Shown here: in pieces, positions 27,676-28,890 of the stretch | Numbering within the stretch: position 1 is the first letter of the stretch | How the letters are laid out: every line of letters starts with the position of its first letter | Source of the DNA: Octopus sinensis | Taxonomy: Eukaryota | Length of the DNA: 64,000 nucleotides | Direction of reading: 5' to 3' | Assembly (NCBI RefSeq): GCF_006345805.1 | Contig: NC_043003.1 | Location: 79,980,001 to 80,044,000 of the forward strand | The notes under the pieces: generated by a model | Told to the model about the DNA's origin: nothing | Seen by the model: only the letters and a program-made list of their open reading frames with translations | Database searches by the model: none | Program-made: the position numbers and the translations under genes

Positions 27676-28890
27676 TCAGGCTGAGTAAAAAGTAAGCGAC
27701 GGTTTGAAACGCAATATATTTCAATAATGCGGTAATTTTATTCATCAAAGTAAGTACCATTACAATCAACACATATATGCCAATGAGTTACAAGTTTATT
27801 TTGGCAATTTCATGGCAATATGTTTCTGCAGTAACGGCTTTTGTGGATTTTAAGAAGTTATAGTGGATGAGACCAGTAGTACTCTATCAAAGAGTCACCA
27901 TAGCATTCTTTTTCAAGAGCTCAGGTTTAGGGAAGGTTTTCGGTGCTTCATTTTGTTCCAACCACTGCGAAGACCGTGCCTCTGCCAATTCTTGTGGGCT
28001 GTACAAGTGGCTTGGAGGAACACCACGTTCTCCTACAGCGATCACCAGCCAGGACGCACCTATTTCTGGGGGTATGTCTTCTACCTTTATCCCGGAAGCA
28101 CGCCTTCCAAGATATATGGGTAGAAGCACTACCACCTCCGCTTTTGAAGGGGTTGCCGAGTGTAGCCTGGTGGTCACTGCATCTCGGAACCGCACCTCCA
28201 TAACTGCAAACTTTCGGCCCTCATTCTGACAAGCAATCTCTCTCCACAGTGGCTCCAACGCCTCTTCAATTTGGCAACTGTTACTATCTGAAACTTCCCG
28301 TTCACCAACTGCAAATGTTCTGTAAATAACCATTTCCCCTTCACCTTGCATTGCTTCTTGGCAACGGGACACCTTCACATTGCGTCCGTGCTCCCTCACT
28401 ATCTCATATATTCCAATTTCTTGTAAATCAACTTGTCTTTGGTGGCTTCCGGCCACTGTTGCGAAGTCCATCCCTCTGTCTGCACTGTCCAGGGCCTTCA
28501 TAAGTTCTTCCTCTGAAGAAGAGAACTCTGAGGAGCCCAAGATCTCACAATTTATCATCATCTTTTTTCAAAGAGCACTGTCCCTTCTCAAAATAGGAGA
28601 ACAGCGCCAAGAAAACTGTCGTAAGGCAGCAAACACAGGTGTCAAAAAACAACAATCAACAACAAACACAGCTCAACAATAGTTACTAACCCCTGGAACA
28701 ACGCATAAACATACAGGAACAAGTCGAGAGGATTGGAACAACGGGGGGCAAACATATCAATGTTAATTTATTGATGCATTTGGGTAAGTCTATGTCTGTA
28801 TTAATGTTTAAAAAACATTCGGAACTCTGCAAAAAATCCGGTACAAATTCTACATGGTTTAAAACCTTGCTTACTTTTTAATCAACCTGA
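27676..28890 (-). mobile_element. Composite element: mariner TIRs and transposase 3' remnant enclosing a LINE 5'UTR+ORF1 fragment
   Basis: TA|tcaggctgagtaaaaagtaagcgacggttt at 27674-27705 and aaaaccttgcttactttttaatcaacctga|TA at 28861-28892; mariner sequence 27700-27975; LINE-like sequence about 27976-28690. Confidence 0.85.
27887..28561 (-). pseudogene. 224-aa chimeric ORF: LINE ORF1 N-terminus fused in frame to mariner RSSQWLEQNEAPKTFPKPEL
   Basis: Supplied ORF; LLPIYLGRRASGIKVEDIPPEIGASWLV matches the ORF1s at 12711 and 20450; the C-terminal roughly 29 aa match the mariner at 21160. Confidence 0.75.

What the first reader, a model, noticed from the sequence alone, without database searches (positions are those of the whole stretch)
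27676..28890. Mariner-TIR-bounded element carrying LINE 5'UTR+ORF1 cargo, with an in-frame ORF1-transposase fusion
Seen: both roughly 30-bp TIRs and both TA TSDs are present, 1215 bp apart, close to normal mariner size. Most of the transposase is replaced by a LINE 5'UTR and ORF1 N-terminus. A 224-codon ORF is open from the ORF1 start across the junction (..ELAEA|RSSQWLEQNEAPKTFPKPEL..). It is the longest clean TE-derived reading frame in this part of the window. Known: Pack-type DNA transposons capture fragments, and Tx1L/Tx1D composites exist. Inference: either a mobilisable Pack-mariner spreading a retrotransposon ORF1, or a deleted LINE-in-mariner composite. This is the best candidate for an undescribed system here.
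Basis: partly seen in the sequence, partly recalled or inferred. Interest (0 to 1): 0.72.

Follow-up and report, generated by a model that had tools for sequence, protein, structure and literature searches.

The report
Dead mariner copy holding LINE fragment
This is an ordinary piece of genomic wreckage in what looks like an octopus genome: a dead mariner transposon sitting inside a SINE, with its middle replaced by the front end of a LINE retrotransposon, and a long reading frame across the join that exists only because of a 14-base deletion.

Summary
Two 33-nt mariner-type terminal inverted repeats (27676-27708 and 28858-28890) bound a 1215-bp element. Its TA duplications are genuine: the joined flanks rebuild an intact SINE 3' end.

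The interior holds about 87 bp of mariner 5' end, then 827 bp of the 5' end of a LINE (242-nt 5'UTR plus ORF1 codons 1-195). It then has two short transposase pieces, about 61 and 19 codons, joined across a roughly 290-bp deletion.

The cargo really is LINE ORF1. It has 107 relatives, and in Octopus bimaculoides homologues sit upstream of an endonuclease/reverse-transcriptase ORF2.

The 224-codon ORF exists but is an accident:
- A 14-nt deletion at codon 176 shifts ORF1 out of its own frame, and only this puts it in frame with the transposase.
- Only 29 transposase codons follow, then TGA TAG where the conserved WW should be.

No second copy of either junction was found, but no host genome could be searched. 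The most likely history is a nested LINE insertion followed by deletion; repair gap-filling is the main rival.

Transposition as a unit remains possible but has no support. Interest is low, and this is not a new system.

The parts
27560..27675 (+). Host SINE, 3' half, up to and including the left TA of the target-site duplication (27674-27675)
   Evidence: Aligns with SINE copies at 48586-48725 and 48836-48975 (minus strand). The alignment runs straight across the insertion point.
27676..27708 (-). Mariner 3' terminal inverted repeat (3' with respect to the transposase, which reads on the minus strand)
   Evidence: TCAGGCTGAGTAAAAAGTAAGCGACGGTTTGAA, 27/33 identical to the other TIR.
27709..27800 (-). 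Mariner 3' UTR plus the last ~19 transposase codons (..KLVTHWHICVDCNGTYFDE*, 27744-27800). The internal deletion breakpoint lies at the 7-nt repeat AATAAAC (27794-27800).
   Evidence: blastn to the second mariner copy: element 27712-27801 matches 21705..21616 at 92%. tblastn with an Hsmar1-like probe covers aa 322-340. About 290 bp present in copy 2 (21326-21615) are missing here, and the gap lies between two AATAAAC repeats.
27794..27976 (-). Mariner transposase fragment, codons ~163-223 (Hsmar1-like numbering): RSSQWLEQNEAPKTFPKPELLKKNAMVTL**STTGLIHYNFLKSTKAVTAETYCHEIAKIN. TGA (27887-27889) and TAG (27884-27886) replace the conserved WW.
   Evidence: Pfam PF01359 positions 7-68/80, 51.1 bits, E 1.3e-13. 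SETMAR 3f2k_A residues 49-109, E 6.6e-16. 80% DNA identity to copy 2 at 21158-21325.
27977..28033 (-). LINE ORF1 DNA read out of its native frame (ORF codons 177-195, ERGVPPSHLYSPQELAEA). The native frame here reads ENVVFLQATCTAHKNWQRHG.
   Evidence: Almost all of the 107 homologue alignments stop at query residue 176. The other frame matches the family consensus E.KI.ILQAT...NWQGQ. A 14-nt gap at about 28036 is seen against both L011 and the LINE of copy 2.
28034..28561 (-). LINE ORF1 codons 1-176 in native frame: an acidic N-terminus and an RRM-like core. The CCHC knuckle of the family is absent because the fragment is truncated before it.
   Evidence: phmmer: 107 hits, best E 1.6e-21. The family architecture with CCHC is seen in longer members. 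Homologues precede APE/RT ORF2 in O. bimaculoides locus L001. AlphaFold core aa 75-150 is beta-alpha-beta-beta-alpha-beta at pLDDT ~90. Foldseek top hits are mostly RRMs but none is significant.
28562..28803 (-). LINE 5' UTR (242 nt). LINE homology begins at TAATACAGACA (28803), probably the 5' terminus of the LINE.
   Evidence: 78% identity to the region upstream of the ORF1 start in Logan contigs L008-L010. Homology starts 12 nt inside those contigs, and the 12 nt before it are unrelated.
28804..28857 (-). Mariner 5' subterminal sequence: a short 5' UTR and about the first 16-20 transposase codons (..FFAEFRMFFK). It ends in TTTTTTAAAC just before the LINE.
   Evidence: Read directly from the sequence. 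The resemblance to the N-terminus of Hsmar1-type transposases and to the mariner N-terminus in L008 is from inspection and memory, so this assignment is inferred.
28858..28890 (-). Mariner 5' terminal inverted repeat
   Evidence: TCAGGTTGATTAAAAAGTAAGCAAGGTTTTAAA.
28891..28925 (+). Right TA of the target-site duplication (28891-28892) and the remainder of the host SINE 3' end (gaaaggat..)
27887..28561 (-). The 224-codon ORF: 176 ORF1 codons, 19 frame-shifted codons and 29 transposase codons, then a stop
   Evidence: No homologue of the fusion was found in the protein collections.

Best explanation
A mariner element of the Hsmar1-like type inserted by cut-and-paste at a TA in the 3' end of a SINE. 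That step is shown.

The copy, or its donor, then became a non-coding chimera. The proposed history, which is inferred, runs as follows:
1. A full-length LINE retrotransposed in sense orientation into the mariner at about transposase codon 20. The LINE carries an RRM-like plus CCHC ORF1, followed by an endonuclease/reverse-transcriptase ORF2.
2. A deletion of about 5 kb then removed everything from ORF1 codon 195 through the LINE 3' end, together with about 430 bp of mariner (codons ~20-162). It left an almost blunt joint at 27977|27976.
3. Two further small deletions followed. One is about 290 bp between AATAAAC repeats in the transposase 3' half. The other is 14 nt in ORF1.

The 14-nt deletion shifts the ORF1 frame so that it happens to run into the transposase frame for 29 codons, producing the 224-codon ORF.

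The element encodes no transposase, no complete ORF1 and no ORF2. It is a relic, not a system. It could move only if a related transposase acted on its TIRs in trans, and nothing shows that this happened.

The confidence of 0.55 is for this specific route of nesting followed by deletion. That the element is a non-functional chimeric relic, whatever the route, I hold at about 0.85.
For: **Mariner insertion.** TIRs and a genuine TA duplication, with the empty site reconstructed from SINE copies.

**Mariner identity and decay.** Pfam 51 bits and SETMAR E 6.6e-16. Stops replace the conserved WW. Only about 100 of about 340 transposase codons are left.

**LINE identity.** 107 homologues. ORF1, then Exo_endo_phos, then RVT_1 synteny in O. 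bimaculoides.

**Cargo starts at the LINE 5' end.**
- Homology with the independent LINE copy L008 begins at 28803. Upstream of that point the two sequences match at only 2 of 12 positions.
- Recognisable mariner sequence ends within about 10-15 nt of the same point.
- A cargo that starts at the LINE's own 5' terminus is what a full-length retrotransposition gives. It is not what template switching at an arbitrary point gives.

**Frame is accidental.** The 14-nt gap is seen against two other LINE copies, and homologue alignments stop at residue 176.

**Deletion at microhomology.** The 290-bp deletion lies at AATAAAC.

**No sign of copies.** No other copy of the cargo or of either junction was found in the window, in fetched loci or in the protein collections.
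Against: - The LINE 5' terminus rests on one comparator locus with only 12 nt of upstream flank.
- No LINE 3' end, poly(A) or LINE target duplication survives, so the retrotransposition step is inferred from one junction only.
- The model needs a large deletion that ends inside the mariner.
- A second mariner fragment 6 kb away also has a LINE ORF1 piece, from a different subfamily, fused 5' in the same orientation. One-off nesting does not predict this, and it hints at a recurrent joining process.
- Copy number in the host genome was not testable.
Confidence: 0.55

Rival explanations
1. Repair gap-filling (filler DNA). A double-strand break inside the mariner, or an excision gap, was repaired by synthesis that switched template to a LINE copy and back. 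This replaced about 430 bp of mariner with 827 bp of LINE, with no retrotransposition into the element. [quoted passage not shown]
For: PMC8277862: TIR elements in 100 animal genomes capture foreign DNA mainly by transposition-independent gap filling, and 98.6% of cases are single-copy.

The element also carries a separate microhomology-flanked deletion. This shows that break-repair events happened in it.

A neighbouring mariner fragment (20395-21705) has an internal LINE ORF1 piece joined to an internal mariner position, with a SINE fragment on the other side. That patchwork fits template switching better than retrotransposition.
Against: The cargo appears to begin exactly at the LINE's 5' terminus, which would be a coincidence under template switching.

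The 3' joint has at most 1 nt of microhomology.

No parental LINE copy lies within the 64-kb window, although gap filling shows a cis bias.
Confidence: 0.27
2. Mobilisable Pack-like mariner. The chimera formed elsewhere by either route and then transposed as a unit into this SINE, using a transposase supplied in trans. It would then be one member of a family spreading a LINE promoter and a truncated ORF1.
For: Both TIRs, a clean TA duplication and a near-native length of 1215 bp are the minimum a mariner transposase needs.

The TA duplication dates only the arrival of the TIR pair, so it is equally compatible with arrival of the finished chimera.

Tc1-Mariner families have been recently active in Octopus vulgaris (PMC13282606).
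Against: No second copy of the cargo, the junctions or the ORF was found in the window. None was found among 107 ORF1 relatives, in the 5.8-billion-cluster protein search, by exact look-up or in metagenome contigs.

Only 4 of 281 unique animal Pack-TIRs are multicopy.

These negatives are weak, because no cephalopod genome could be searched as DNA.
Confidence: 0.13
3. A functional ORF1-transposase fusion protein: the 224-aa product is maintained by selection, for example as a domesticated RNA-binding protein.
For: The ORF is open for 224 codons in 36%-GC DNA, and the ORF1 part has a confidently predicted beta-alpha-beta-beta-alpha-beta core.
Against: - The frame exists only through a 14-nt deletion that mistranslates 19 codons.
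- The transposase part is 29 codons from between catalytic residues, followed by two stops in a conserved motif.
- The CCHC knuckle is lost.
- There is no homologue of the fusion anywhere.
- The low dN/dS of 0.23 against L008 reflects LINE lineage evolution before capture, and dS is saturated.
Confidence: 0.02

Closest known systems
Internally deleted non-autonomous mariner / Tc1-mariner derivatives (MITE precursors formed by microhomology-mediated deletion, e.g. PMC3814204; deletion derivatives in Rhodnius and aphids, PMC4678618, PMC5490172)
   Same: Both have about 30-bp TIRs, a TA duplication, loss of most of the transposase, and an internal deletion between short direct repeats (AATAAAC here).
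   Different: Most of the interior here is foreign DNA: 827 bp of LINE. It is not just shortened mariner sequence.
Pack-TIR / Pack-MULE elements (PMC8277862)
   Same: Foreign DNA lies between the two ends of a TIR transposon. The element is probably single-copy. Formation by break repair is plausible.
   Different: Pack-TIRs are defined by non-TE (host) cargo, and this cargo is another transposon. No parental copy was identified nearby. The 3' joint has at most 1 nt of microhomology. Mobilisation is not shown.
Nested TE insertions, and the Tx1L-in-Tx1D composites of Xenopus (recalled from memory, not checked in a paper here)
   Same: A LINE lies inside a DNA transposon in the same orientation, and the LINE's 5' end is present.
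   Different: Tx1L is site-specific for a sequence in Tx1D and keeps its 3' end. Here the LINE 3' end is gone. The one related LINE copy with an upstream flank (L008) is not preceded by mariner sequence.
Ac/Ds and P-element derivatives with filler DNA (PMC3260210; P element work cited in PMC8277862)
   Same: Transposon ends are retained and the interior is replaced by unrelated sequence during repair.
   Different: Those fillers are usually short and start at arbitrary points. Here the insert begins at what seems to be the LINE's own terminus.

Membership tests
mariner (Tc1/mariner superfamily), non-autonomous copy | TA target-site duplication | tested here: met
   TA is present on both sides. 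The joined flanks rebuild an intact SINE site, cctatagTAgaaag, as seen in two other SINE copies.
mariner (Tc1/mariner superfamily), non-autonomous copy | Terminal inverted repeats of about 28-33 bp | tested here: met
   33-nt arms with 27/33 identical. These are the only two such sites in 64 kb, with 0 expected by chance.
mariner (Tc1/mariner superfamily), non-autonomous copy | Internal sequence homologous to a mariner transposase | tested here: met
   PF01359 at 51.1 bits against a cut-off of 24. SETMAR transposase domain E 6.6e-16.
autonomous mariner | Intact transposase of about 340 aa with DNA-binding domain and DD(34)D triad | tested here: not met
   Only codons ~1-20, ~163-223 and ~322-340 remain, and there are two stops in the WW motif.
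Pack-TIR (PMC8277862) | Internal cargo is non-TE host sequence | tested here: not met
   The cargo is the 5'UTR and ORF1 of a LINE.
Pack-TIR (PMC8277862) | Same chimera present at several TA-flanked sites (multicopy, mobilised) | not testable with these tools
   No cephalopod genome is searchable as DNA. There was none in the window, the fetched loci or the protein collections.
LINE ORF1 of the RRM + CCHC kind | Homology to an ORF that lies directly upstream of an APE/RT ORF2 | tested here: met
   In L001 (O. bimaculoides CM046605.1), ORF1 at 15749-16573 is followed by Exo_endo_phos pieces at 17042-17938. The adjacent copy has RVT_1 at E 2.2e-11.
LINE ORF1 of the RRM + CCHC kind | CCHC zinc knuckle | tested here: not met
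   The knuckle is present in longer family members. It is absent here because the fragment ends about 60 codons before it.
LINE ORF1 of the RRM + CCHC kind | RRM fold | tested here: inconclusive
   The model core is beta-alpha-beta-beta-alpha-beta at pLDDT ~90. The Foldseek top list is dominated by RRM domains, but the best E is 0.075.
Complete LINE insertion by target-primed reverse transcription | 3' end / poly(A) and flanking target-site duplication | tested here: not met
   The LINE stops at ORF1 codon 195 and is joined directly to mariner codon ~163.
Tx1L/Tx1D-type site-specific nesting | Related LINE copies always preceded by the same transposon sequence | tested here: inconclusive
   The one comparator (L008) has an unrelated 12-nt upstream flank. 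That is too little sequence to be firm.

The most novel reading that the evidence does not exclude
The chimera is one member of a mobilised family: a mariner-TIR vehicle that has transposed as a unit while carrying a LINE internal promoter and a truncated RRM-type ORF1.

The repeated LINE-ORF1-then-mariner junctions may also point to something more general. There are two in this window and one looser case in contig L008. They could reflect a recurrent, directional joining mechanism between these two transposon classes in octopus genomes.
Probability: 0.1. Interest if true: 0.4.

Novelty: new member of a known kind. Interest (0 to 1): 0.12.

Why it matters
It matters little as it stands. It is a clean, well-delimited case of a transposon-in-transposon relic, and of how an apparent in-frame fusion ORF can arise by accident.

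Its use is mainly cautionary for annotation. A 224-codon ORF with detectable domain similarity on both sides would be called as a chimeric gene by an automatic pipeline.

If genome-wide searches showed that the junctions are multicopy, it would be a rare animal case of a Tc1/mariner element carrying retrotransposon sequence around.

If LINE-ORF1|mariner joints turned out to be over-represented, that would say something about break repair or LINE integration in the repeat-rich cephalopod genomes.

Tried and rejected
**Searches that found nothing**
- Whole-ORF homology search in the 5.8-billion-cluster collection gave no hit. The word index misses relatives at about 55% identity or less, which the exhaustive HMMER search then found.
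- A profile search with alignment A1 in the same collection gave only 2 hits, because of the candidate cap.
- Exact-sequence look-ups found nothing on record for the ORF, for an RT ORF of the window, and for P0038 and P0054. The host assembly could therefore not be identified.
- The metagenome scan for relatives found none. This was expected, because that collection is not cephalopod.
- Foldseek against PDB gave no significant match.

**Technical failure**
The search was redone with X at the stops.

**Ideas rejected**
- My own first guess put the mariner 5' part as far in as about 28740 (INIDMFAP resembling NINNAFGP). The alignment with L008 shows LINE homology from 28803, so this was wrong.
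- I considered that the element and mariner copy 2 descend from one ancestral LINE-mariner composite. Their ORF1 DNA is only about 66-70% identical while the mariner DNA is 80-92% identical.
- I considered a site-specific LINE of the Tx1L kind. The L008 upstream flank is unrelated.

**Test that was run but is uninformative**
- dN/dS as a test of function was computed at 0.23 over 91 codons. It does not help, because the divergence predates capture and dS is saturated.

Full report
**1. What is there**

The finding's coordinates are accurate.
- The repeat finder reports one long inverted repeat in the region. Its arms are 27674-27708 and 28858-28892, 35 nt including the flanking TA, and 83% complementary.
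- A 22-nt pattern taken from the arms occurs only at these two places in 64 kb, with none expected by chance.
- A looser scan (at least 20 of 27 shared positions) finds no third site.
- The TIR sequence, TCAGGTTGATTAAAAAGTAAGC.., is of the mariner type.
- TIR outer edge to outer edge is 1215 bp (27676-28890), and TA lies on both sides.

**2. The TA duplication is genuine**

The left flank is the 3' half of a SINE that is common in the window. The right flank continues that SINE.
- Joined with a single TA, the flanks read ..tttcaggccttgtagctatagTAgaaaggat.
- This aligns without a break against two intact SINE copies..ccttgtgcctatagTAgaaagaatt, at 48600-48631 and 48852-48883.

A TIR-bounded element therefore arrived here by a mariner-type integration. 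This says nothing about what its interior looked like when it arrived.

**3. The mariner parts**

The element reads on the minus strand. Downstream of the junction the frame gives RSSQWLEQNEAPKTFPKPELLKKNAMVTL**STTGLIHYNFLKSTKAVTAETYCHEIAKIN.
- It matches Pfam Transposase_1 positions 7-68 (51 bits, E 1.3e-13).
- It matches the Hsmar1-derived SETMAR transposase domain (E 6.6e-16).
- In that alignment the two stops, TGA and TAG, stand exactly where the conserved WW is.

A second fragment of the same mariner family lies at about 20945-21705 on the plus strand.
- It matches the element at 80% over 184 nt and 92% over 90 nt.
- Relative to it, the element lacks about 290 bp of the transposase 3' half. 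The break lies between two AATAAAC repeats.

With it, the element retains codons ~163-223 and ~322-340. Upstream, about 16-20 N-terminal codons remain next to the 5' TIR; this last point is inferred from inspection. About 100 of about 340 transposase codons are left.

**4. The cargo is the 5' end of a LINE**

The word-indexed protein search found nothing. The exhaustive HMMER search with ORF residues 1-195 found 107 relatives at E<=1e-3 and 16 at E<=1e-10 (best 1.6e-21).

Longer members show the family architecture:
- an acidic N-terminus;
- a conserved core, RG.KFGTVEVRF ... LLP.Y.GRR.S.I.V..IPPE.D..WLVAAV;
- then ..NWQGQ.. and VEGRKPRC(Y/F)KCG..GH....CP, a CCHC knuckle;
- and a K/E-rich tail.

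One member is annotated in Octopus bimaculoides.
- In its chromosomal locus, L001, a 274-aa homologue with a zf-CCHC hit is followed about 470 bp later by ORFs matching Exo_endo_phos.
- The neighbouring copy carries RVT_1.
- So the family is the ORF1 of an endonuclease/RT LINE.

An AlphaFold model built on the alignment has a confident beta-alpha-beta-beta-alpha-beta core at residues 75-150. Foldseek against PDB gives no significant hit, but the top of the list is mostly RRM domains. RRM-like is therefore suggestive only.

The 242 nt upstream of the ATG are LINE 5'UTR.
- Logan contigs L008-L010 carry a 56%-identical ORF1 N-terminus. They align with the element from 28803 down through the UTR, at 78% identity, and into ORF1, at 70%.
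- Homology starts 12 nt inside those contigs. Upstream of that point the two sequences agree at only 2 of 12 positions.
- Recognisable mariner sequence in the element stops within about 10-15 nt of the same point.

The cargo therefore spans 27977-28803 (827 bp) and probably begins at the LINE's own 5' terminus. This last point rests on one comparator and is an inference.

**5. The fusion ORF is an accident**

Nearly all 107 alignments end at query residue 176.
- Beyond it, the ORF reads ERGVPPSHLYSPQELAEA, which matches nothing.
- Another frame of the same DNA reads ENVVFLQATCTAHKNWQRHG, which is the family consensus.
- DNA alignment with two other LINE copies (copy 2 in the window and contig L011) shows a 14-nt gap in the element at about 28036.
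- Without that deletion, the ORF1 frame would enter the mariner out of frame and stop after about 17 codons.

The same alignment places the LINE|mariner joint between 27977 and 27976. It has at most 1 nt of microhomology.

The 224-codon ORF is thus made of:
- 176 true ORF1 codons;
- 19 mistranslated codons;
- 29 codons from the middle of a dead transposase.

It lacks the CCHC knuckle and any transposase domain.

The ORF1 part being stop-free is what one expects of a fairly young LINE fragment. dN/dS against L008 is 0.23 over 91 codons, but dS is saturated and the divergence predates capture. It says nothing about selection on the chimera.

**6. How it arose**

Three histories fit the anatomy.

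(a) Nesting then deletion.
- A full-length LINE retrotransposed into the mariner at codon ~20.
- A deletion then removed the LINE from ORF1 codon 195 to its 3' end, plus about 430 bp of mariner.
- I favour this because the cargo seems to start exactly at the LINE terminus.

(b) Gap filling by template switching during break repair.
- This is the route proposed for most animal Pack-TIRs (PMC8277862).
- It is favoured by the patchwork look of the neighbouring mariner fragment and by the other deletion in the element.
- It is disfavoured by the terminal start of the cargo, the near-blunt joint, and the absence of a LINE parent within the window.

(c) Either route elsewhere, followed by transposition of the finished chimera into this SINE.
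- The TIRs, the TA duplication and the size allow it.
- Nothing supports it. No second copy of the cargo or junctions turned up in the window, among ORF1 relatives, or in the protein collections. None appeared in metagenome contigs or in other ORF1-bearing contigs.
- These negatives are weak, because no cephalopod genome could be searched as DNA.
- In the survey of 100 animal genomes only 4 of 281 unique Pack-TIRs were multicopy.

**7. Comparison with known kinds**

It works like, and is, a non-autonomous mariner relic. TIRs, TA duplication and transposase homology were all tested and met. An intact transposase was tested and not met.

It resembles a Pack-TIR but fails the definition, because the cargo is itself a transposon. 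It resembles Tx1L/Tx1D nesting (recalled from memory) but shows no site specificity and has lost the LINE 3' end.

It is a new instance of a known kind of wreckage, not a new system.

**8. Unexplained**

Two of the three LINE-ORF1-like fragments in the window lie directly 5' of a fragment of this same mariner family, in the same orientation. These are the element itself and copy 2 at 20395-21705.
- Their LINE parts are only about 66-70% identical, while the mariner parts are 80-92% identical. They are therefore independent events.
- Contig L008 also has a mariner N-terminus about 490 bp downstream of its LINE fragment.
- Five other ORF1 loci show no mariner nearby.

In a genome that is about two-thirds repeats (PMC13282606) this may be chance. 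It needs a genome-wide count.

**9. Host**

The GC content is 36%, TA/CA microsatellites are abundant, and the closest named relative is in Octopus bimaculoides. These point to an octopod genome. The species was not identified.

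Noticed in passing
window 20395-21705 (+): This is a second fragment of the same mariner family, from codon ~85 to the C-terminus, with no recognisable TIRs. Fused directly at its 5' side, in the same orientation, is an internal LINE ORF1 piece (codons ~150-300, including the CCHC knuckle CYKFGQKGRIRKECP). The LINE piece comes from a different subfamily, about 66-70% identical in DNA to the cargo of the element. 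A reverse-oriented SINE fragment lies upstream of it.
   Followed up: partly
window 12400-13100 (+): A third LINE ORF1-like pseudogene (..VCGLPPEIEPEW.., CHLCLKPGHIKKNCP) with several stops and frameshifts. No ORF2 is evident downstream and no mariner is adjacent. This stretch has the highest GC in the window (43%).
   Followed up: partly
window 16887-17198 (-): A divergent mariner-like transposase fragment, 28% identical to an Hsmar1-like probe over codons 172-279. It belongs to a different family from the element.
   Followed up: no
window 48500-49060 (-), 56559-56771 (+), 6077-6276 (-), 47812-47916, 24241-24344, 11337-11604: Many copies of the SINE that hosts the element. At 48.5-49.1 kb at least two copies lie head to tail. 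Their conserved 3' end, ..ccttgtgcctatagtagaaaga, supplied the empty-site test.
   Followed up: partly
window 28562-28803 vs L008 13-249: The LINE 5'UTR is better conserved between the two LINE copies (78%) than the ORF1 coding sequence (70%). It is far better conserved than synonymous sites (pS 0.62). This suggests constraint on the UTR, for example an internal promoter.
   Followed up: partly
L008 1-1296 (Logan SRR11869390): This contig is another patchwork. It has a LINE 5' end with ORF1 cut at codon ~93, then about 490 bp including a repeat also seen at window 27460-27515. A mariner N-terminus (codons ~3-91) follows in the same orientation, without a TIR.
   Followed up: partly
window 38846-39574 (-) and 40735-41217 (-): A 242-aa ORF with a strong RVT_1 hit (E 1.5e-23). 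About 1.2 kb upstream on the same strand lies a 160-aa ORF with a poly-Q stretch and a DUF7083 hit (E 2.6e-9). Together they look like a decayed retroelement, possibly LTR-type, unrelated to the finding.
   Followed up: partly
window 21690-21745 (+): A near-perfect palindrome, ttatcatgtagttactcagtcgtaactacatgataa, sits where the 3' TIR of mariner copy 2 should be. It is either a small insertion or a rearranged TIR.
   Followed up: no
window 70-666, 9474-9872, 29244-29700, 52016-53065: Long microsatellite or low-complexity tracts (TA/CA-type, an ACN-rich run, CTAT-type). They generate spurious ORFs of 130-318 codons in the mechanical ORF list.
   Followed up: no
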